A stretch of DNA of 63,035 nt, counting the filler, from Reticulomyxa filosa (taxonomy: Eukaryota > Protista > Foraminifera), in assembly GCA_000512085.1 (NCBI GenBank). It is 15 parts of 15 records of this genome, joined end to end, with 100 filler letters (N's around TTAATTAATTAA, not from the genome) between each part and the next. Parts side by side here need not be neighbours in the genome. Positions count along the whole stretch, not along the records: positions 48,937 to 57,546 come from ASPP01017936.1; 14 more parts are not named here. One strand, written 5' to 3'. The position numbers and the translations under genes were made by a program. Position 1 is the stretch's first letter. Each line of letters starts with the position of its first letter. The notes below the pieces were generated by a model. It was not told the DNA's origin, ran no database searches, and worked only from the letters and a program-made list of their open reading frames with translations. This document shows positions 48,937-57,546 of this stretch, piece after piece.

Positions 48937-49896
48937 CATTGAGAAAATCAATTATCATCATAAGATATGTTTTATGCGTTAAATTTTTGAGGTTGCAACT
49001 ACAGTAGGTTGCAAAGAAAACTGATCAACTTTTCCAATATTTGAAATTGCTGAAATAAATCGTCTCAAATACAATCGACTGCAAAAAACTCCTAAAATGA
49101 ACACATACAAACATTTGTAAGTTTAATCAATATTTTTTCAAAAAATTGAAAAAAAATATTCACGATTTTTCACACTTTTATTAAAAATCAAATACTTTTT
49201 TAGATTATCTAGGATGAGTAAACATACTTAAAAAAGAATTTTAAAAAATATTTATTTTCGTGAATAAATTACAAATGTTTATGGAGGTTCATTTTGAAGG
49301 GACCTTTTCCTTTGCTTGGATTGTATCATATATTTTCCGTGTATTGATTTTTTTTTTTTTTGGAGCAAAAGGAAGTGCAGATTATATCACATGATTAGAT
49401 TGCCAGATTTGTGCTGGCATACCTATTAAATGGCTTAATGATGACCATAAAGAAGTAATAAACAAAAACGATATTACCTTACAACAGTTTATGTGCCTTG
49501 CGTTTACCCGACGTGCCGGAAATCACTGCAAAGAGGAGAGAAAAGGTGTTTTATATTTATTCTGTCAAAGCTGGGCTTTATGGAGGAATGAACGCTGTTG
49601 GAAAAAAAGACCAGTCAATGTATTCGGTAAGCGTACTTTTGTATTCATTCACAAAACAACAAAAACTGTGCTTTTGAGCAATTGGAAAAAAAAGAAATTT
49701 AGCTATTATATAGCTTGACAAAGAGACAAGCCTTATATTAAAGAATTATACTCTGCATTGTATTTCGTTTATGATGGATTGAACAATTCAATAAACTGGC
49801 TGCACAATACGTTGAGTAGTATTGTTTCTCATTTGATCTAAATGTCTAAATTTTTTGACCTGCCACATTTTTAACATAAAAAAAATTAAAGTGTTT

Positions 49897-50790
49897 ATGT
49901 CTTCTTTAAATGAGGAAATAAAGCTGAGATTTTCACCGAATGGCCGTATGGCTTTATTGTGCTTCAGAGATGGAAAGATGGAGTTATGGGACAAAGAATT
50001 ACGAAATAAAATTGGATCAATGCAGGGACATTCCAGTGCAATTGGAAATGCAGAATTTTCATTTGATTGTAGATTTGTTGTATCATGTTCACATGACAAA
50101 ACAATTCGAATATGTAATGTGATATCAGTAAAAGAAGTGAAAAAATTGGGAGGGAATTGTGATGGCGTGAGAACAATACAGTTTTCATCTGATGACAAAA
50201 CAATTGTGTCTTGTTCAACTGATGAAACAATTTGATTATTAGATGTGCAATCAGGAAATGAAATACACACGCTAGAAAAGAATGAAGATCATGAATTTAG
50301 CGTTTACCTGATGTTAAATCATTGCATCATATAGTGTTGATGAAGTATCATTATTTCTGTCTTTGGAATTACTTTTGGCTTCACACGCACACTACGAAAA
50401 AATATGAAAACATTAGTTGGACATAAAAAATTAGTGCTTGATGTACAGTTTACTTCAGATGAGCTCAGTATTATTTCTTGCGCAAATGATGCAACCATTC
50501 GATTATAGGATGTGCAATCAGGAAAAGAACTTCGGCGCTCTGAAGGCGATTTCTGCGATGCAGAAATTGTAAAATTGTCAATGGATGACCTCAGAATTAT
50601 CACGTGCACGAAAAACCGCAAAATTCAAATATGGGACACAAACACAATGACAGTTGTACAAAAGACGAAAGCAAATTCAAATGGTAAGTCATATTGCTAT
50701 CTCGCCAGATGGAAATATAATTACATTACGCAAACGTGATGGGACTTCAATTACGAGGATGATGTACATCACCTGTGATCCAAATAACTG
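49897..50790 (+). pseudogene. WD40-repeat pseudogene
   Basis: FSPNG, GHSS, VSCSHDKTIRI repeats with in-frame stops at conserved positions (TGA 50233-50235 for R; TAG 50506-50508 for the W of WD). Confidence 0.8.
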
Positions 50791-51267
50791 AAAAAATAAG
50801 ACATTTCAACTAAGTGTATTGCAAAAAAAAAACAACAAATTTTGATATTATTTGCGGATTTCTTCAGTCAAACTCAATCTCGTAACTACAATATTTTGGA
50901 AAACTTGTTTAAACTTGCAAGTCAGTATCGTAGTTTTTGATTTGTTCTGTAAATTCGTGATTACATTCAATTTTAGATGGCTCTATTAGATTTACAAATG
51001 AATCTCAAAACGACTCCCTTTCTACTCCAAAAAGTAGAGATCTTATCAATAAAACAGACAAGTCACGACTGTCTGAGAAAGATATTGCAACTCGCAACTG
51101 TTTGAACAAGGCAAACTGCGTAGAAGAATGAAAGAAGATATGGTCGTGACATTAACTTTTTCTTACACAACTTTTTTTTTGTTGTATGATGTTTTGTTGA
51201 AGGATGAAAAAGTATTAAAGTGAACAATACGAGACGAATTGTATGGTTTACAAAAAAAAAAAAAAAG

Positions 51268-52345
51268 GCTGACAATGAGATAGCAACAATTTTACAACGA
51301 TGGCTTAGAACAGCGTCAATAAACCTGGGATGGATCAACGATTTCAACAAAATTGTTGCGCGATATACTCAAGTTTTCCTCATTGACAAAATTTCTGTAT
51401 ATTTTGATGTAACACCTGCAATTCTAATATCGCTAAAAAAAATTCAAGGGCGAACACTTCAAGCTATTAGGGGTAATCAACGGACATTCCAGGGCAGTGA
51501 CAAGTGTAAATTTTTCCTCAGATGGTACTAAAATCGCTTCAGCTTCATGGGACACAACAGTTCGAATATGGGATGTGGCATCGATGAAGGAAATTGATAG
51601 ATTATTAGGACATTACAATTGGGTAAATGATGCAAATTTTTCATTGGATGGGAAGATGGTGGTATCTTCATCCGATGATCAAACAATACGATTATGGGAT
51701 ATAAGTTCCGGACAAGAGATGAGAAAATTAAGAAGGGCTGAACATAGCATAACAAAAAGTAAATTTTCACCAGATGGAAATACTATTGTATCATGTGAAA
51801 AAACAATAATTCAACTTTGGGATGTAACATCTCGACAAGAATTGAAAAAAATGCAAGGACATACAAATTTGGTAACTGATGTTGAATTTTCACCTGATGG
51901 CAAATTTATTGTATCTTCTTCGAATGACAAAACAATTGCGATATGGAATGTGCTATCAGGCCAAAGAGTACGCCAATTGCAAGGACATTCAAGTTTTGTA
52001 TTAAGAGCCAAGTATTCTTTAGATGGCTCCAATATTGTATCTGGCTCTTATGATGGAACAATTCGAATATGGGATGTGTCATCAGGAGCAGAGTTGGTGA
52101 AATTCCAAGGACATTCCGATGCGGTAAGCGATGTGCAATTCTTGCCAGGAAAGAAATTTATTGTATCATGTTCTTTTGACAAAACAATTCGGATTTGGGA
52201 CATCAGGTCGAGACACGAAGTGCAACAATTGTTACGACACAGAAAAGATATAACGGCTTTGGATGTGTCGCCAGATGGCAAAATGATGGTGTCTTCTTCT
52301 GAGGATGAGACAATCATGTTGTGGGCAAGAATAAAAACAATATAA
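51268..52345 (+). CDS. lineage-expanded WD40-repeat protein (7 repeats; 5' exon uncertain)
   Basis: EIATILQRWLRTASINLGWINDFNKIVARY exon, intron 51373-51448, then in-frame GH...FSPDG...D.TIRIWD repeats to the stop at 52345. Confidence 0.88.
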
Positions 52346-53749
52346 TTGTTTCCACTCGTTGCATTTTGTGCTTGTTGCGTCTTTGATTATTTTAAGTAAT
52401 GTTACTGTTAATCTTACATCCGTTTTTTGGATGGTCTGAAGATGTAAGATCATAACGCAATAAGATGTAATTGTTTGAGCAAATTTCAATAAAAAAAAAT
52501 GAAAGATAAAGCGAAATAAAAAAAAAGTTAAAAAAACCTGTTTAGACTTTCAATAATAAGTGGTTTTGTTTAAAAGTGTTATAACTTTGCTCCCATTTCT
52601 AATCCTGAAGTAAAGTTTTCTAATATTGCTGCAAAATGCATTTTAGTTTAGTGAAAGAAAAAGTAAAACAATAAGAAGATAACCAAGACGAAGCTATGCT
52701 CGTCTTAGCTTTCTCTTTCAATTTTGCGTATTTAAATAAAGTTACAACTTTTGTATAGATATACAGCCCATTAACCCGAAATCTCCTATCGATGCTAACA
52801 TATTCAAATTGACTGTATTATACTTTAAGAGATTTGCTTGCTGATTTTCTTTCGAGGGGTTACAACGGTTCCTGTTAAAAACACCGAAAAAAGCGAGTTG
52901 CTGGTGATCTATGTAATCAATTTTTATTTAAATTCATGATGAAATATCGATAATAGACTGAAAATTATTAATAAAAAGTAAAGTAATAATTTCACTCGCA
53001 TAACTTAAAATTTCTTTGTGTAGGATTGATACTTATATTTATTGTAGATTGTTTTGATGACATCTAATTTTTATATTAAAAGTAATAATGAAAAATATTT
53101 TATAATCGTCTTGATTTAAATAAAGAAAGCAAAGTAATTGCTACTTGTAGTTATATGAATGAAACTAAAGTTATGTTGTTTGGCTGGATTAAAATCAATG
53201 TATTTATGGCCACTTACAAAACAACAAATGCATATTCATATTGTTGTGGTACCGAATATCGTTATTGTCATCATTGTATTATTATTGCTATTATGTTTGG
53301 ACTTTATTTTAGCAAATTTTTCATATGATGAAAATATACAAAAATTGTACTTGATATTATTACTGGAAACCTAACACTAATTTTGGTCTTGACAATAAAA
53401 CCTTTTAACAACAATTCGAAACACATGTCTCAATTTACTTGTTAATTCCAAATTATCAATGAAGAGCTAGTTATTATCAAATTTATTATCAGCGAATCCA
53501 TAACACATTAATACTATAAATTTGAAATCAATATTGTCCAGAATCATTGAAGCTATAAAATCAATGAAAAAGTTAACATCACAGCAGTAAATGAAATTAC
53601 TATAATCAACTCAGCAAATGTCAATATGCGCAATGGAAATTCTCATGAGATTTAGATAATTCATTTCTTTAAGAAACCAACTTTGAAATGCCAATTTAAA
53701 TCAAGTGAATTTTTATCAAGTTGATTTCACAAACACACCTATTAATAAC

Positions 53750-54050
53750 ATCTACTTTGGCGAACATGCCTATTTGAAGTTACAGCGGATAGTGTAACAA
53801 AGTGCAATTTTCGCCAGACTGTTCAAAAATCGTGTCATGTTTAGATGATAAAACAATCCGGCTGTTGGACGTGTTGTCTGGAAACAAACTCGTGTATTAG
53901 AAGGGCATTCTCATTATGTCATGACAGCACAATTTTTACCAGATGGTTCTAAAATTGTATCTTATTCACGAGACAAAACTTTCGAATATGGGACAAATCT
54001 TCACGACTACAAATTCAATCGTTGGAAGCATATCAAGGAAAATAGATGCA
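53750..54050 (+). pseudogene. WD40 relic
   Basis: VLEGHSHYVMTAQFLPDGSKIVSYSRDKT flanked by frameshifts and stops. Confidence 0.7.
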
Positions 54051-54370
54051 AACAAATTTGACTCAATATTTGTTATGCAGGAAATTTTTCTAATACCAAA
54101 CTGTGTTTTGATAGGTTTTTATTTGTCGGGATCTCCTTTCTTAAAACGAAAGAAAATTCCTCGTTTTAATTATAAAGAGAAAGTCAATTGTAAAGGACAG
54201 ATAATTAGAAATCTTTTGTCTGTTGAAATGAGCCATCAATTTTAAAAAATAAGGCCAATTTGCCAAAGTTTAAAAAACTATCTAATAAAAACACAATGAT
54301 GACAAACATTTTGCCTTTGTGTTTTTGCGGTGGACCTTTTTGTTTTTATCTTTGATAACGGAGATTTTTC

Positions 54371-56453
54371 ATGATGGCAGGAAAAGAAAGCATTAGAAGT
54401 TTTTTATCAGTGCTGAGACCAGCTTATGTTGAGACTGTGTTGACCGAGCTCTTCGATAACATAGCGTGTGACGACACCGAAGCCGTGGCGTCATTATCGT
54501 CAAACAGATGGAAGATCCTGTTCAAAAAAATAGCACTGCCTGAGGGACAGCAAAAAAAGTTGATCGATGCGGTCAACAAGTTGCGTCTCCGAGCGAGTTT
54601 GCCTTATTTTCTTGTTGAAACTACTATGGTTGACATTGAAACATCGGAGTTAAACTTTATCCGAGCAGAAACCTTAGAGCGAGTCAAAAAAAAAAAACAA
54701 CACACTTACATTTTTTAAAATTCGTTTGTGTATTGCAAAAAGTGCAAACCCAAATCCATCATCGTCAGTGCTGATATCTTGTGGAAACGGGGACAATGAT
54801 ACGTATACCGAAAAGATCAACAATTGTGAAAGTGCAAAGATGGTGTGTTTTAAAATTATAACAATATTTTATATTATTAATTATAAATAAATAAAAAAAA
54901 AAAAAAATAGAGTGCTCCAAAAAACGAAGAAAAAGAGAAAGAAGGAGAAAGTGTAAAAGACACTAATACTGGTAAAGCGAATCAATTGAAAAACCGAATC
55001 GAAATGCGCAAGCCGCGTCGGTATCAAATGGAGAACATTCGCTCAGTGGCTCAAGATTTAGTGTGTAACATGAAAAAAGAGGGAGTATTTGCAATATTTA
55101 AACGACAAGACGAGATTTGGACGGACTCGGAATTTTTGGGCGTGATATTGGATGGCAGTATTCAAAAGGCGACTGCTCTCGCGTCCGATTTGCAAAGCTG
55201 TGACTTGATATTTTTGCTATCAATTCCGCAAAACATACTCGAAACTATGTACGACGTAACGGCAGACGACTGCGTATACTACCCCTTCTTTTCCAGGCTG
55301 TCCACGATAGTAAAGGAACGGGCACAACAGGCTCCGTTTGGAGGCTTTCATATTAAACATGACTGCGGCCGCAGACAAGCACCTTACATGTCGATCGTAT
55401 GGAAGCATGTGCATTTTAACATCTTCGTGGCATTTCATTGTCCACTGTTTTGGAAAGACAATAGTCACGAGCTTTGGAAGGTTAACATTTGGGAAGACCA
55501 AATTCCTGAAAATTTGATTCAAGATTTTAATCGTGATACTGTCAACTCTGCGTATTTGTCATTAATGAAAAAAATTAATGGTGCCGACAAAGGTACCAAA
55601 CGCTTATTTCTATCGAATCTAAGCCTTTGGAACTCTGTATTATCAGTTTATATACATATATATATTCCTTTTTGAGGTGTTGGTTAGACACATAATGATA
55701 CTTACAAAACTAAAACTAACAATAAATAAAATAAAATAAAATAAAATATAGATAAACTACGTTAAAAAATTACCATCGATGTGTAGAGATGTAGTAGTTT
55801 TGCTAAAAAAAATGTGGGAAGAAAAAAAAAGGGGCAAACAGTTCATTCAACTACCAAAAAGCTATTCCTTGGAAATAATTGCCGCATGTGCGTACAATTC
55901 CAAGCCAAGGCAAGTATTTGTAGACGATACCGCCATTACTGCGTTACTTATCGATATGCTTGACTTAATGATTACTTGTGCTTCGTCCGAAGAGGACATT
56001 GTTGTCACAGCACAAGAGAAGCTTACACAAAGCGAATTTCTACAGAAAAAAACAAATGGAATTTGATGGTAATTCGGAGCAAGTCTTGGCAAAGAACTTG
56101 ATTAACGATTTAAAACTTGTTTATCCGACCAAAAAGTATTTATTATTGATCCATCTTTTTCATCAAGTTATGTGAATTTAATATCATCTTTACAATTTTT
56201 AATACGTCCCTAAAACATTTTAATCAAACAACATTGTATGTTCTGTATTACAAAAGAATGCAAAGATCAGTTTCTTCCAATCGTAGAACGCGATTTCACA
56301 AGATGGGCTGACTTAGCAGTTGAACTTGAGTCGTTCAGAGATATATTGCAACGCTATGGACCACGTGCCATTCTTTTTGCATTAGAAGGACCATACGCAT
56401 TTCTTGAGGCCAATGCTGACCTACAAAGTAGTACCACGAAGACTAGCAAATAA
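54371..56453 (+). CDS. SAM-domain plus OAS-like (2'-5' oligoadenylate synthetase/CD-NTase superfamily) nucleotidyltransferase-fold protein
   Basis: Predicted exons 54371-54678, 54743-54842, 54911-55636, 55752-56166 and 56257-56453. SAM-like N-terminus; DGSIQKATAL..SCDLIF; VHFNIFVAF; YVKKLPSMCRDVVVLLKKMW; LPKSYSLEII; FIIDP; RWADLA. Two frameshifts in A runs in exon 4. Confidence 0.75.
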
Positions 56454-57546
56454 ACGCGAATATTAATGAGGAGTTTATCATCAGCTCAAAAGTATGACTA
56501 TTGAAATCACAATCGCATATTCAAAAGAAAAGTGAAATAATTTAATCAAATTCAGAAATTATTTACACACATTATCCAAAAACAAAATTAGACCTTTATT
56601 TGGACCATATTATAAATTAAATCACAATTTGATTTCTTTTTTTTATAATACAATTACATATGTTTCCTTTGCTAACATAAAATTTATCATTATTCGATCG
56701 AATATACAAAGAACGAATTGTGTTATCATACAGTATATTGCAGAAAAAACTGCAATACCTAAATGGCATTATATGAATAAAATCAATTTTCTCCATGAAA
56801 AATAAAGATTTAAACATAATTTTTTAAAATATACTAATATTGTAGTTTTTAAATGAAATTGGTTTTACAATAAGTTTTTTCTATGTTGATCAAAAATATG
56901 ATTTTTTTAAATGATTTTTAAAAATTTTGAATGAATTCATATAAATTAAACCTGTATTGCAAATAAGAAATTTTTAAATCTTTTTGTTTTCATTTTAGGA
57001 ATATTCAAGTCACATAGATACTTTTTTTAAAAATTAGCCTTGTATCTTTCATAGTTTTTAACAAAATTTTAAAACATTTTTTTTGATTATTTAAAAAATA
57101 TTTTTTTGTTGAAAACTTGTTTTTTGGTAATGTTTTATCACTTTCACGCAAATTAATTTTTGTTTCTTCTGAAAAAATGACTTTTTTAAATCATATACAG
57201 TCTATTGTTTATAAATTGCGAATTCTAACTTTGCTTTGATATGACTAGAATCTAAATATGGCTTTTCTTCTTAGTTACTGTACAAATCTCAAAATCGAAG
57301 GAAGCTCTTACATTAAATTTCTTTGCTACGATCGAATACTAGCTCCACCAACCAGCATACTAACAGCAACTCCTTTCTTAAAAGCAATCAAATGTTTCAC
57401 CATTTTAAATATCAAAATTTTGAAATGTTAATTAAAAATCTCAACAATAAAGAAAATTAGCAAAAAAAAAAGGAATTTAATATTTAAAAACTACAAGATT
57501 AATAGATATTTAAAAAAAAATTAGGTTTAAATCTTTATTTTTCATG

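What the first reader, a model, noticed from the sequence alone, without database searches (positions are those of the whole stretch)
54371..56453. SAM-domain plus OAS-like nucleotidyltransferase in a non-animal eukaryote: candidate innate-immune sensor
Seen, in OAS order: VILDGSIQKATAL, CDLIFL, VHFNIFVAF, NYVKKLPSMCRDVVVLLKKMW, LPKSYSLEIIAACAY, VFIIDP and RWADLA. These parallel the OAS1 motifs GGSSGKGTTL, DADLVVF, VEFDVLPAF, LKSLIRLVKHW, LPPQYALELLTVYAW and PVILDP. The N-terminus reads as a SAM domain (FLSVLRPAY...LASLS-like helix...LPEGQQKKLIDAVNKL). Known: OAS, cGAS and CD-NTase enzymes make antiviral second messengers, and SAM domains oligomerise. Inferred: an unusual SAM-OAS architecture that could couple nucleic-acid sensing to polymerisation in a protist.
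Basis: partly seen in the sequence, partly recalled or inferred. Interest (0 to 1): 0.8.

Follow-up and report, generated by a model that had tools for sequence, protein, structure and literature searches.

The report
Foraminiferan OAS-like gene, SAM-like head
This is a four-exon gene of the foraminiferan Reticulomyxa filosa that encodes a divergent relative of the antiviral OAS enzymes behind a small SAM-like domain, but it has lost two of the three catalytic residues and is broken twice in the assembly, so it is probably a non-enzymatic or decaying copy and not an active sensor.

Summary
The piece is the whole contig ASPP01017936.1 of Reticulomyxa filosa (Foraminifera, Rhizaria). The gene is RFI_20635, a mis-spliced public "hypothetical protein".

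Its only detectable relatives among billions of proteins are seven R. filosa paralogue models. Two of them already sit inside the OAS superfamily in the published CD-NTase tree of Culbertson & Levin 2023; this gene is not in that dataset.

Direct links to OAS are weak but consistent:
- Pfam OAS1_C, E 0.037.
- Family profile against human OAS1, E 0.022.
- Structural Z 8.4 on a poor model.

The N-terminal 75 residues fold with pLDDT about 80 into five helices that match SAM domains best (Z 5-7.4). No SAM sequence family is hit.

In this copy the OAS catalytic triad reads S, D, N, where three paralogues have D, D, D. Two 1-nt frame breaks lie inside homologous coding sequence, at an A7 and an A5 run.

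Verdict: a real OAS-superfamily gene with a new SAM-like head, probably catalytically dead. Whether it is intact is open. Interest is moderate.

The parts
54371..54682 (+). Exon 1 (104 codons, ATG at 54371 or 54374): N-terminal domain plus linker. Proposed donor GT at 54683.
   Evidence: An open frame with GC 0.43, against 0.26 in the following intron. The linker after the domain resembles the corresponding part of paralogue P0002 by eye. The public model splices differently here, so the exon 1 / exon 2 junction is my proposal and is not verified.
54374..54592 (+). SAM-like five-helix domain (residues about 2-74).
   Evidence: AlphaFold2 gives pLDDT about 80-85 over residues 10-80, with helices 2-14, 17-30, 36-40, 44-54 and 58-74. 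The best structural matches are SAM domains: LEAFY oligomerisation domain 4ude Z 7.4, rmsd 2.3 over 68 residues; EphA2 SAM Z 6.8. Foldseek's top list is mostly SAM domains, TM up to 0.62. The domain is homologous to the N-terminus of paralogue RFI_32459: local score 71 against 25.9 +/- 4.7 in shuffles, 0 of 2000. No Pfam SAM hit.
54683..54910 (+). Intron 1 (228 nt, GT..AG, GC 0.26).
   Evidence: Part of it is translated in the public model P0001, but that segment has no counterpart in any paralogue.
54911..55636 (+). Exon 2 (242 codons): nucleotidyltransferase core.
   Evidence: 100% identical to P0001 residues 141-382. It matches paralogues at 32-39% identity, E 3.8e-34 to 2.5e-21. Protein-language-model features point to SMODS/CD-NTase clusters, score 0.91. 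The core of the (poor) model aligns to human OAS1 residues 29-156 with Z 8.4. 0 of 20,000 shuffles of this exon stay free of stop codons.
55154..55159 (+). G-S of the hG[GS] nucleotide-binding motif (reads D-G-S where paralogues have G-G-S).
   Evidence: Alignments.
55196..55204 (+). S-C-D at the position of the D-x-D catalytic pair (OAS1 D75, D77). The first Asp is replaced by Ser.
   Evidence: Paralogues P0003, P0004, P0005 and P0007 have D-[EG]-D; P0002 has N-G-N. The family profile aligns this motif to OAS1 S-D-A-D-L-V. Coordinates.
55418..55420 (+). Asn at the position of the third catalytic Asp (OAS1 D148).
   Evidence: The paralogues' IQFDVLVAF aligns to OAS1 VEFDVLPAF. The window has VHFNIFVAF.
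55637..55751 (+). Intron 2 (115 nt, GTATTA..ATATAG, GC 0.19), containing an (AAAAT)n microsatellite at 55707-55748.
   Evidence: The public model uses the neighbouring donor 9 nt downstream.
55752..56166 (+). Exon 3: the helical C-terminal (OAS1_C-like) domain, interrupted by two 1-nt frame breaks.
   Evidence: Pfam OAS1_C E 0.037 over profile positions 34-85. OAS2 9h1z is the best solved-structure sequence hit, at the same motif in both of its OAS units. Homologous to P0003, P0006 and P0008. The donor at 56167 is in phase 1, at the same place as the paralogues' donor.
56046..56052 (+). A7 run: first frame break (coding homology continues in frame +1 after it).
   Evidence: Frame A runs into TGA at 56064-66. 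The next 28 codons (56053-56136), read in frame +1, are homologous to the stretch that precedes the VFIID motif in P0006 and P0003.
56131..56135 (+). A5 run: second frame break (coding homology returns to the original frame).
   Evidence: VFIIDP follows in frame A. The paralogue loci read straight through this point in a single frame.
56167..56256 (+). Intron 3 (90 nt, GTTATG..ACAAAAG, GC 0.23).
   Evidence: Its position and phase are conserved with paralogue loci L001, L002, L004 and L005.
56257..56453 (+). Exon 4: last helices of the C-terminal domain, stop TAA at 56451-56453. Absent from the public gene model.
   Evidence: tblastn against P0003, P0006 and P0008: 46-53% identity, E down to 1e-9. 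The public model ends at window 56175.

Best explanation
Window 54371-56453 (+) is gene RFI_20635 of the foraminiferan Reticulomyxa filosa. It is a fast-diverged member of a small, lineage-specific, birth-and-death family of OAS-superfamily nucleotidyltransferases.

Shown:
- The gene has four exons. The product has a SAM-like five-helix head, a low-complexity linker, a Pol-beta-type nucleotidyltransferase core and an OAS1_C-like helical domain.
- The core keeps the G-S nucleotide-binding motif but reads S, D, N where OAS1 and three paralogues have the D, D, D metal-binding triad.

Inferred:
- The product cannot run the canonical two-metal 2'-5' oligoadenylate or cyclic-nucleotide synthesis.
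- If it is still functional, it acts as a pseudoenzyme. It would keep the nucleotide- or nucleic-acid-binding scaffold and contribute the SAM-like head for self-association or recruitment, much as OASL, MAB21L1 or NF45/NF90 work without catalysis. It might modulate the paralogues that keep the triad.
- The gene was kept open by selection for most of its history. It has no in-frame stop in about 549 AT-rich codons at 35-39% identity to its kin.

Whether the two A-run frame breaks are draft-assembly miscalls (my odds about 55-60%) or real recent lesions is not settled.
For: Identity of the locus:
- The 8,610-bp piece equals contig ASPP01017936.1. Exon 2 is 100% identical to ETO16704.1 / RFI_20635.

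Family:
- An exhaustive HMMER search of 1.84 billion representatives found only R. filosa proteins.
- Word-index searches with a paralogue and with the family profile added only more R. filosa members.

OAS affinity:
- P0003 (EukProt P007837) and P0005 (P006249) sit with three other R. filosa sequences in a 100%-supported clade. That clade lies among dinoflagellate, green-algal, diatom and animal OAS-like sequences, next to bacterial clade C, in the tree file of PMC10732462.
- The family profile's best solved-structure hit is human OAS1 4ig8, E 0.022. It aligns the G-G-S..D-x-D, F-D-V-L and L-P-x-x-Y-x-L-E motifs collinearly.
- Exon 3 alone hits Pfam OAS1_C at E 0.037 and OAS2 at E 0.19.
- OAS1 ranks first in the structural second look, Z 8.4, rmsd 3.4 over 103 residues.
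- Language-model features point to CD-NTase/SMODS clusters.

Active site: alignments.

SAM-like head.

Gene model: exon/intron GC contrast, and an intron position and phase conserved with the paralogues.

Constraint:
- The window copy has 0 in-frame stops.
- Paralogue locus L005 has at least 5 in-frame stops plus frameshifts, and loci L002 and L001 carry indels at non-homopolymer sites.
- 0 of 20,000 shuffles of exon 2 stay open.
Against: - No single sequence or structure match of this gene to OAS is significant by itself.
- The full-length model is poor (mean pLDDT 42). On it, OAS1 is tied within 1 Z unit with TUTases, cGAS, DncV and NF90/NF45.
- The window gene was never placed in a tree. 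Only its paralogues were, and by others.
- The SAM call rests on a two-sequence AlphaFold model and on Z values of 5-7.4, a range the tool itself calls middling for helical domains. HhH glycosylase and integrase N-domains also appear in the lists.
- Loss of catalytic residues, two frame breaks and several clearly dead paralogues together are equally what a decaying copy looks like.
- Inactivity is inferred from alignment, not measured.
Confidence: 0.55

Rival explanations
1. It is a recently dead pseudogene. On this view the two 1-nt indels at the A-runs are real slippage mutations, translation stops at TGA 56064-66, and the degenerate catalytic triad reflects relaxed selection in a family that is shedding copies.
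For: - The frame breaks are in the deposited sequence, and the public predictor had to invent an intron to get round the first one.
- Other family loci are demonstrably decaying. L005 has at least 5 in-frame stops. L002 differs from L005 by several single-base indels. The P0003 locus has a non-homopolymer frameshift relative to L004.
- Two of the three catalytic carboxylates are gone.
Against: - There is no in-frame stop and no non-homopolymer indel in about 1,650 coding nt, despite more than 60% protein divergence from all kin.
- Both breaks sit in homopolymer runs, which cover only 6.6% of the coding bases (0.066 squared is about 0.004 if placed at random).
- The assembly is a very fragmented draft, N50 3.6 kb.
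- Splice sites, intron phase and the non-catalytic family motifs are intact.
Confidence: 0.3
2. It is an active OAS-like sensor. On this view it binds nucleic acid, synthesises a nucleotide second messenger, and uses the SAM domain to polymerise.
For: - OAS-superfamily kinship.
- The G-S motif and one Asp of the D-x-D pair are retained.
- The head is SAM-like.
- The family shows the expansion and decay typical of immune genes.
Against: - The first and third catalytic carboxylates are Ser and Asn, where OAS1 and paralogues P0003, P0004, P0005 and P0007 have Asp.
- By my knowledge of OAS1 and cGAS, loss of any one of these abolishes activity.
- No receptor was identified (not searched).
- Oligomerisation was not shown; the complex prediction gave no verdict.
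Confidence: 0.08
3. It belongs to a different Pol-beta-fold family (NF45/NF90 DZF, terminal uridylyl or poly(A) transferase, CCA-adding enzyme), and the OAS likeness is superficial.
For: On the low-confidence model, TUT4, URT1, NF90/NF45, cGAS and DncV score within 1 Z unit of OAS1.
Against: - All sequence-level signals point to OAS only: Pfam OAS1_C, and OAS1 and OAS2 as the top solved-structure sequence hits for the exon, a paralogue and the profile.
- There is no DZF, PAP or TUTase Pfam hit at E up to 10.
- The paralogues fall inside the OAS clade in a published tree that included cGLR and bacterial CD-NTases.
Confidence: 0.05

Closest known systems
OAS superfamily of CD-NTases (human OAS1/2/3; OAS-like proteins of protists, as defined in Culbertson & Levin 2023, PMC10732462)
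   Same: - The motifs are collinear: hG[GS]xxK.T, the D-x-D strand, F-D-V-L-x-A-F, the L-P-x-x-Y-x-L-E helix, V-h-I-h-D-P, and a W-x-x-L-A helix.
- OAS1 or OAS2 is the best sequence and structure hit.
- Its paralogues sit in the published OAS clade.
   Different: - The catalytic triad reads S, D, N in this copy.
- Pfam OAS1_C scores below its gathering threshold (14.1 against 19.9 bits).
- An N-terminal SAM-like domain is added.
- No RNase L-type receptor is known or was searched for here.
- The family is detectable only within R. filosa.
OASL and other catalytically dead members of the fold (MAB21L1/2, MiD49/51, NF45/NF90 DZF)
   Same: They have an OAS/cGAS-type scaffold with degenerate catalytic carboxylates, joined to or acting through a protein-interaction module. 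By my knowledge OASL carries two ubiquitin-like domains. The OASL OAS-like domain 4xq7 aligns at Z 7.0.
   Different: This is an analogy only. The extra domain here is N-terminal and SAM-like, not C-terminal and ubiquitin-like. No orthology is implied and no function has been tested.
SAM (sterile alpha motif) domains, e.g. LEAFY N-terminal oligomerisation domain, Eph receptor, CASKIN2, tankyrase and SARM1 SAMs
   Same: About 70 residues in five helices. The predicted model superposes at rmsd 2.2-2.6 A over 62-68 residues, Z 6.5-7.4. TM normalised by target is about 0.6.
   Different: There is no sequence-family match. Related HhH-type helical domains also score. Head-to-tail polymerisation was not shown.
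Paralogues RFI_32459, RFI_32460, RFI_34063, RFI_38289, RFI_26060/26061 and RFI_21429 of R. filosa
   Same: They share the core and the C-terminal domain, and intron 3 has the same position and phase. RFI_32459 also has the N-terminal domain and also has a degenerate D-x-D (N-G-N).
   Different: - The window copy is the most divergent, at 30-39% identity.
- It lacks the repeat-rich C-terminal tail seen in P0006 and P0008.
- RFI_34063, RFI_38289, RFI_26061 and RFI_32460 keep D-x-D, and RFI_34063 and RFI_32460 also keep the third Asp. None of them shows an N-terminal domain in the DNA available.

Membership tests
OAS superfamily (CD-NTase; NTase core + OAS1_C PF10421) | Pol-beta nucleotidyltransferase core with the hG[GS] motif | tested here: met
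   G-S at 55154-55159 aligns to G-G-S of the paralogues and of OAS1. The core of the model aligns to OAS1 residues 29-156 at Z 8.4, but the model is poor, pLDDT 42.
OAS superfamily (CD-NTase; NTase core + OAS1_C PF10421) | Three metal-binding carboxylates (OAS1 D75, D77, D148) | tested here: not met
   The window reads S (55196-98), D (55202-04) and N (55418-20). Paralogues P0003 and P0005 have D, D, D.
OAS superfamily (CD-NTase; NTase core + OAS1_C PF10421) | OAS1_C helical domain recognised by Pfam above its gathering score | tested here: inconclusive
   Exon 3 scores 14.1 bits, E 0.037, against a cut-off of 19.9. OAS2 and OAS1 are the top solved-structure sequence hits at E 0.19 and 0.022. 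The published hmmscan table also shows no Pfam hit for the R. filosa members.
OAS superfamily (CD-NTase; NTase core + OAS1_C PF10421) | Phylogenetic placement inside the OAS clade | not tested
   It is shown for paralogues P007837 and P006249 in the published tree. This gene (EukProt P019606) is absent from that dataset, and I could not bring the reference sequences into the session.
OAS superfamily (CD-NTase; NTase core + OAS1_C PF10421) | dsRNA-activated synthesis of 2'-5' oligoadenylates | not testable with these tools
   This needs a biochemical assay.
SAM domain (sterile alpha motif) | Compact five-helix bundle of about 65-70 residues | tested here: met
   The AlphaFold2 domain has pLDDT about 80 and five helices. 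SAM domains dominate the Foldseek and VIA-align lists: Z 5-7.4, rmsd 2.2-3.0. SAM_1/SAM_2 and p73 SAM clusters appear in the Atlas search.
SAM domain (sterile alpha motif) | Sequence match to a SAM family profile | tested here: not met
   No SAM-clan Pfam family is hit at E up to 10 for the window domain or its paralogue. Language-model features give only sub-threshold leads, SAM_NCD1 at 0.88.
SAM domain (sterile alpha motif) | Self-association or polymerisation | tested here: inconclusive
   A three-copy complex prediction gave no verdict. It counts neither for nor against.
cGAS / cGLR (Mab21, PF03281) | Mab21 domain match and placement in the cGLR clade | tested here: not met
   No Mab21 Pfam hit. 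cGAS and MB21D2 appear only as weak structural ties. The paralogues are in the OAS clade, not the cGLR clade.
NF45/NF90 DZF domain | DZF (PF07528) match | tested here: not met
   No DZF hit at E up to 10. The structural tie at Z 7.7 is on a poor model.

The most novel reading that the evidence does not exclude
A SAM-like/OAS-like pseudoenzyme is a functional part of a foraminiferan antiviral system. On this reading it senses nucleic acid without catalysis, polymerises through its SAM-like head, and recruits or regulates the catalytically intact OAS-like paralogues. It would be a protist counterpart of OASL with a different adaptor domain.
Probability: 0.1. Interest if true: 0.7.

Novelty: new variant of a known kind. 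Interest (0 to 1): 0.4.

Why it matters
OAS-like proteins are the commonest CD-NTases across eukaryotes, yet almost nothing is known of what they do outside animals. This locus shows several things about a foraminiferan. It carries a small, rapidly turning-over OAS-like family in which copies with an intact triad, degenerate copies and dead copies sit side by side. One branch of that family has acquired a SAM-like head, a fusion not noted in the published survey. The most divergent member was missed by that survey, probably because it is so divergent and because its public gene model is mis-spliced. If the gene is intact and expressed, it offers a natural pair for asking how protist OAS proteins signal: a member with the catalytic triad (RFI_34063) against a member without it that has a SAM-like head. 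If it is a pseudogene, it is simply one more decaying copy.

Tried and rejected
Searches and tools that gave nothing:
- The word-index search with exon 2 alone found nothing. The 491-aa public model lies outside that tool's length band.
- Pfam, PADLOC and the solved-structure sequence search gave no hit reaching E 0.01 for any exon or paralogue except DUF7014 (E 0.0012, below its cut-off) for P0003.

Structure and binding:
- The AlphaFold2 model of the public protein with an 8-sequence alignment was poor, pLDDT 42. Its fold matches show the NTase class but cannot separate OAS from cGAS, TUTase or NF90.
- Complex prediction with three copies of the N-terminal domain gave no verdict, 0.30 against a mark of 0.32. 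It is not evidence either way.

Models I considered and rejected:
- A 68-nt mini-intron (56069-56136, GT..AG) that would remove the need for the second frame break. It would delete about 23 codons that are homologous to a stretch the paralogues read through without interruption.
- The public model's 103-nt intron (55943-56045) that jumps over the first break. It deletes a conserved segment, including the E-[ED]-I-V-V-T motif shared with P0006.

Tests that were uninformative:
- I asked whether the window keeps the columns that are invariant among three paralogues better than the variable ones. It does not, 48% against 46%.
- A link between the neighbouring WD40 genes. The window's WD40 and the one next to paralogue locus L004 are only about 30% identical and differently oriented, so this is probably coincidence.

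Not found or not done:
- The sequencing platform of the assembly could not be found in the held papers.
All searches used single exons by reference or the unaltered public model P0001.
Full report
**What is there**

The piece 48937-57546 is the complete 8,610-bp contig ASPP01017936.1 of the draft genome of Reticulomyxa filosa, GCA_000512085.1. R. filosa is a naked freshwater foraminiferan in Rhizaria. The locus is annotated publicly as hypothetical protein RFI_20635 (ETO16704.1, UniProt X6MS82, EukProt EP00480_P019606; P0001 here, 491 aa). Exon 2 of my model is 100% identical to its residues 141-382.

**Gene model**

I read four exons:

| Exon | Coordinates |
|---|---|
| 1 | 54371-54682 |
| 2 | 54911-55636 |
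| 3 | 55752-56166 |
| 4 | 56257-56453 (TAA at 56451-53) |

- The three GT..AG introns are 228, 115 and 90 nt. The reported mean intron length for this genome is 87 bp (PMC13746701).
- Exons have GC 0.34-0.43 (0.23 in a 31-nt tail) and introns 0.19-0.26.
- The donor at 56167 (phase 1) and the acceptor at 56255-56 coincide in position and phase with the intron in four paralogue loci.
- The public model differs in three ways. It translates part of intron 1. It skips a conserved 103-nt stretch of exon 3 to get round a frame break. It stops at window 56175, so it lacks the last exon.
- The exon 1 / exon 2 junction is my proposal only.
Everything was searched exon by exon, by reference, or with the unaltered public model.

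**Relatives**

- An exhaustive HMMER scan of 1.84 billion representatives with exon 2 found four proteins, all from R. filosa.
- Word-index searches with paralogue P0003 and with a family profile added four more, again all from R. filosa.
- The family known to me is RFI_20635, RFI_32459, RFI_32460, RFI_34063, RFI_38289, RFI_26060/26061 and RFI_21429.
- None has a significant Pfam hit. The published hmmscan table for the R. filosa members shows the same.

**Link to OAS**

- Culbertson & Levin (PLoS Biol 2023, PMC10732462) recovered five R. filosa CD-NTase homologues by iterative HMM search of EukProt.
- Two of those five are my P0003 (P007837) and P0005 (P006249).
- In their main tree file the five form a 100%-supported clade. 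It sits next to dinoflagellate, volvocine-algal, diatom and animal sequences, beside bacterial clade C. That is where the paper places the OAS superfamily.
- The window gene (P019606) is not in any of their files.
- My own tests agree but are weak:
  - Exon 3 hits Pfam OAS1_C at E 0.037, below the cut-off.
  - OAS2 is the best solved-structure sequence hit for exon 3, at the equivalent helix of both OAS units (E 0.19).
  - P0003 alone aligns to OAS1 at three collinear motifs (E 1.2).
  - A six-sequence family profile has human OAS1 4ig8 as its top hit (E 0.022).
  - Language-model features point to SMODS/CD-NTase clusters (0.91).
- The AlphaFold2 model of P0001 is poor, mean pLDDT 42. Every top Foldseek hit on it is a template-independent nucleotidyltransferase: MB21D2, cGAS, OAS1/2, NF90/NF45, TUTases (E 0.013-0.1).
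- In the VIA-align second look, OAS1 ranks first (Z 8.4, rmsd 3.4 over 103 residues). It is tied within 1 Z unit with TUT4, cGAS, DncV and NF90.
- So the fold class is clear. The assignment to OAS rests on sequence motifs and on the published placement of the paralogues.

**Active site**

Alignment to the paralogues and, through the profile, to OAS1:

| Position | Window | Paralogues / OAS1 |
|---|---|---|
| Nucleotide-binding motif | D-G-S (55151-59) | G-G-S |
| D-x-D pair (OAS1 D75-A-D77) | S-C-D (55196-55204) | D-[EG]-D |
| Third Asp (OAS1 D148) | N (55418-20) | D |

Two of the three metal ligands are therefore gone. RFI_32459 is degenerate in a different way (N-G-N). RFI_32460 and RFI_34063 keep all three acids, and RFI_38289 and RFI_26061 keep the D-x-D pair in the part that is modelled. 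By established knowledge of OAS1 and cGAS, loss of any of these residues abolishes catalysis. I therefore infer that this copy is not a synthetase. This is an inference from alignment, not a measurement.

**N-terminal domain**

- Residues 1-75 are significantly similar to the N-terminus of RFI_32459: local score 71 against 25.9 +/- 4.7 for shuffles, 0 of 2000.
- AlphaFold2 on the two-sequence alignment gives pLDDT about 80-85 for residues 10-80 and five helices.
- Foldseek's list is dominated by SAM domains (ANKS4B, EphB2, EphA7, SAMD5, Scm, SAMHD1, p73). TM normalised by target reaches 0.62 and rmsd is 2.6-3.0, but E is only 0.6-2.6.
- An independent all-against-representatives search puts the LEAFY SAM-type oligomerisation domain first (Z 7.4, rmsd 2.3 over 68 residues). 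EphA2, CASKIN2, SAMD5, ASK3, tankyrase and SARM1 SAMs follow at Z 5-6.8.
- The Atlas shape search returns SAM_1/SAM_2 and p73-SAM clusters among others. Language-model features give sub-threshold SAM leads.
- No SAM profile matches at the sequence level.
- HhH glycosylase and integrase N-domains also appear in the lists, and the tool warns that such Z values are middling.
- I call the domain SAM-like in fold with about 70% confidence. I do not call it a member of a SAM sequence family.
- A three-copy complex prediction gave no verdict.

**Is the gene intact?**

- Coding homology to P0003, P0006 and P0008 runs in one frame to 56045, in frame +1 for 56053-56136, and back in the first frame from 56136. 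The paralogue loci read this stretch without interruption.
- The switches can only lie at the A7 run 56046-52 (one A too many) and the A5 run 56131-35 (one A too few). As deposited, translation ends at TGA 56064-66.
- For miscalls:
  - These are the only lesions in about 1,650 coding nt.
  - Both fall in homopolymer runs of 5 or more bases, which cover 6.6% of the coding bases.
  - There is no in-frame stop, even though the protein is only 30-39% identical to any relative.
  - The assembly is a very fragmented draft, 50,809 scaffolds, N50 3.6 kb.
- For real lesions:
  - The family is visibly decaying elsewhere. L005 carries at least five in-frame stops.
  - L002, 96% identical to L005, carries several single-base indels.
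  - The RFI_32460 locus has a non-homopolymer frameshift.
  - Homopolymers are also natural slippage sites.
- I put about 55-60% on an intact gene.
- I recall, but could not verify in the held literature, that 454 data contributed to this assembly. That would favour miscalls.

**How it most likely works**

Shown: the domain order is SAM-like head, acidic/basic linker, OAS-type core with a degenerate triad, then OAS1_C-like helical domain.

Inferred: it has no canonical synthetase activity. If it is functional, it is a scaffold or sensor that binds nucleotide or nucleic acid and self-associates or recruits partners through the SAM-like head. That is analogous to OASL, MAB21L1 or NF45/NF90, and it might act on the paralogues that keep the triad. 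An antiviral role is a reasonable guess from the superfamily and from the birth-and-death pattern, but nothing here tests it.

**Novelty**

OAS-like genes in protists, including R. filosa, are already catalogued. What is new is this unlisted, highly divergent member, its loss of catalytic residues, and the SAM-like N-terminal domain it shares with RFI_32459. I rate it a new variant of a known kind, of moderate interest. The rating is limited by the unresolved integrity of the gene and the lack of any functional evidence.

Noticed in passing
window 49855-52345 (+); L004 2348-3539 (-): A multi-exon WD40 beta-propeller gene lies 2 kb upstream of the OAS-like gene (public model 497 aa at window 50404-52345). 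Another WD40 gene lies beside the paralogue fragment in L004. The two WD40 proteins are only about 30% identical and differently oriented, so the pairing is probably coincidental.
   Followed up: partly
L005 1126-2886 (+) and L002 1125-2840 (+): These are two 96%-identical copies of an OAS-like gene, each downstream of a tRNA_bind-domain gene, so this is a segmental duplication. L005 has at least five in-frame stops plus frameshifts and a G-to-W change in the G-G-S motif. L002 has several single-base indels. Both look like pseudogenes that the public annotation split into short models (P0004, P0006, P0007).
   Followed up: yes
L001 145-1327 (-) and 2257-3839 (+): RFI_32459 and RFI_32460 lie head to head. 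The region upstream of RFI_32460 holds frame-broken remnants of the RFI_32459 linker, so part of the 5' end was duplicated in inverted orientation and then decayed. RFI_32460 also has internal frame breaks that the predictor bridged with mini-introns.
   Followed up: partly
P0008 residues about 150-209; P0006 residues about 160-234 (L004, L002): Some paralogues carry a C-terminal tail of short repeats (M-D-K-I-S-S-type units in P0008) or a coiled-coil-like K/E/L-rich stretch after the OAS1_C-like domain. The window gene stops shortly after the start of that region and lacks the tail.
   Followed up: no
window 54374-56175: The public gene model RFI_20635 is mis-built. It translates about 55 codons of intron 1 that have no counterpart in any paralogue, removes a conserved part of exon 3 to cross the A7 frame break, ends in the shifted frame, and omits the last exon 56257-56453.
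   Followed up: yes
window 55707-55748: An (AAAAT)n microsatellite with 8 copies lies inside intron 2.
   Followed up: no
PMC10732462, supplementary hmmscan table: Protist OAS1_C proteins in that survey carry varied extra domains: ubiquitin in Zooxanthella and Noctiluca, CHAT, a zinc-binding domain, and a faint SAM_Exu hit at the N-terminus of one Noctiluca protein. Related dinoflagellate nucleotidyltransferases carry an alpha-kinase domain. N-terminal adaptor fusions to OAS may therefore be common outside animals.
   Followed up: no
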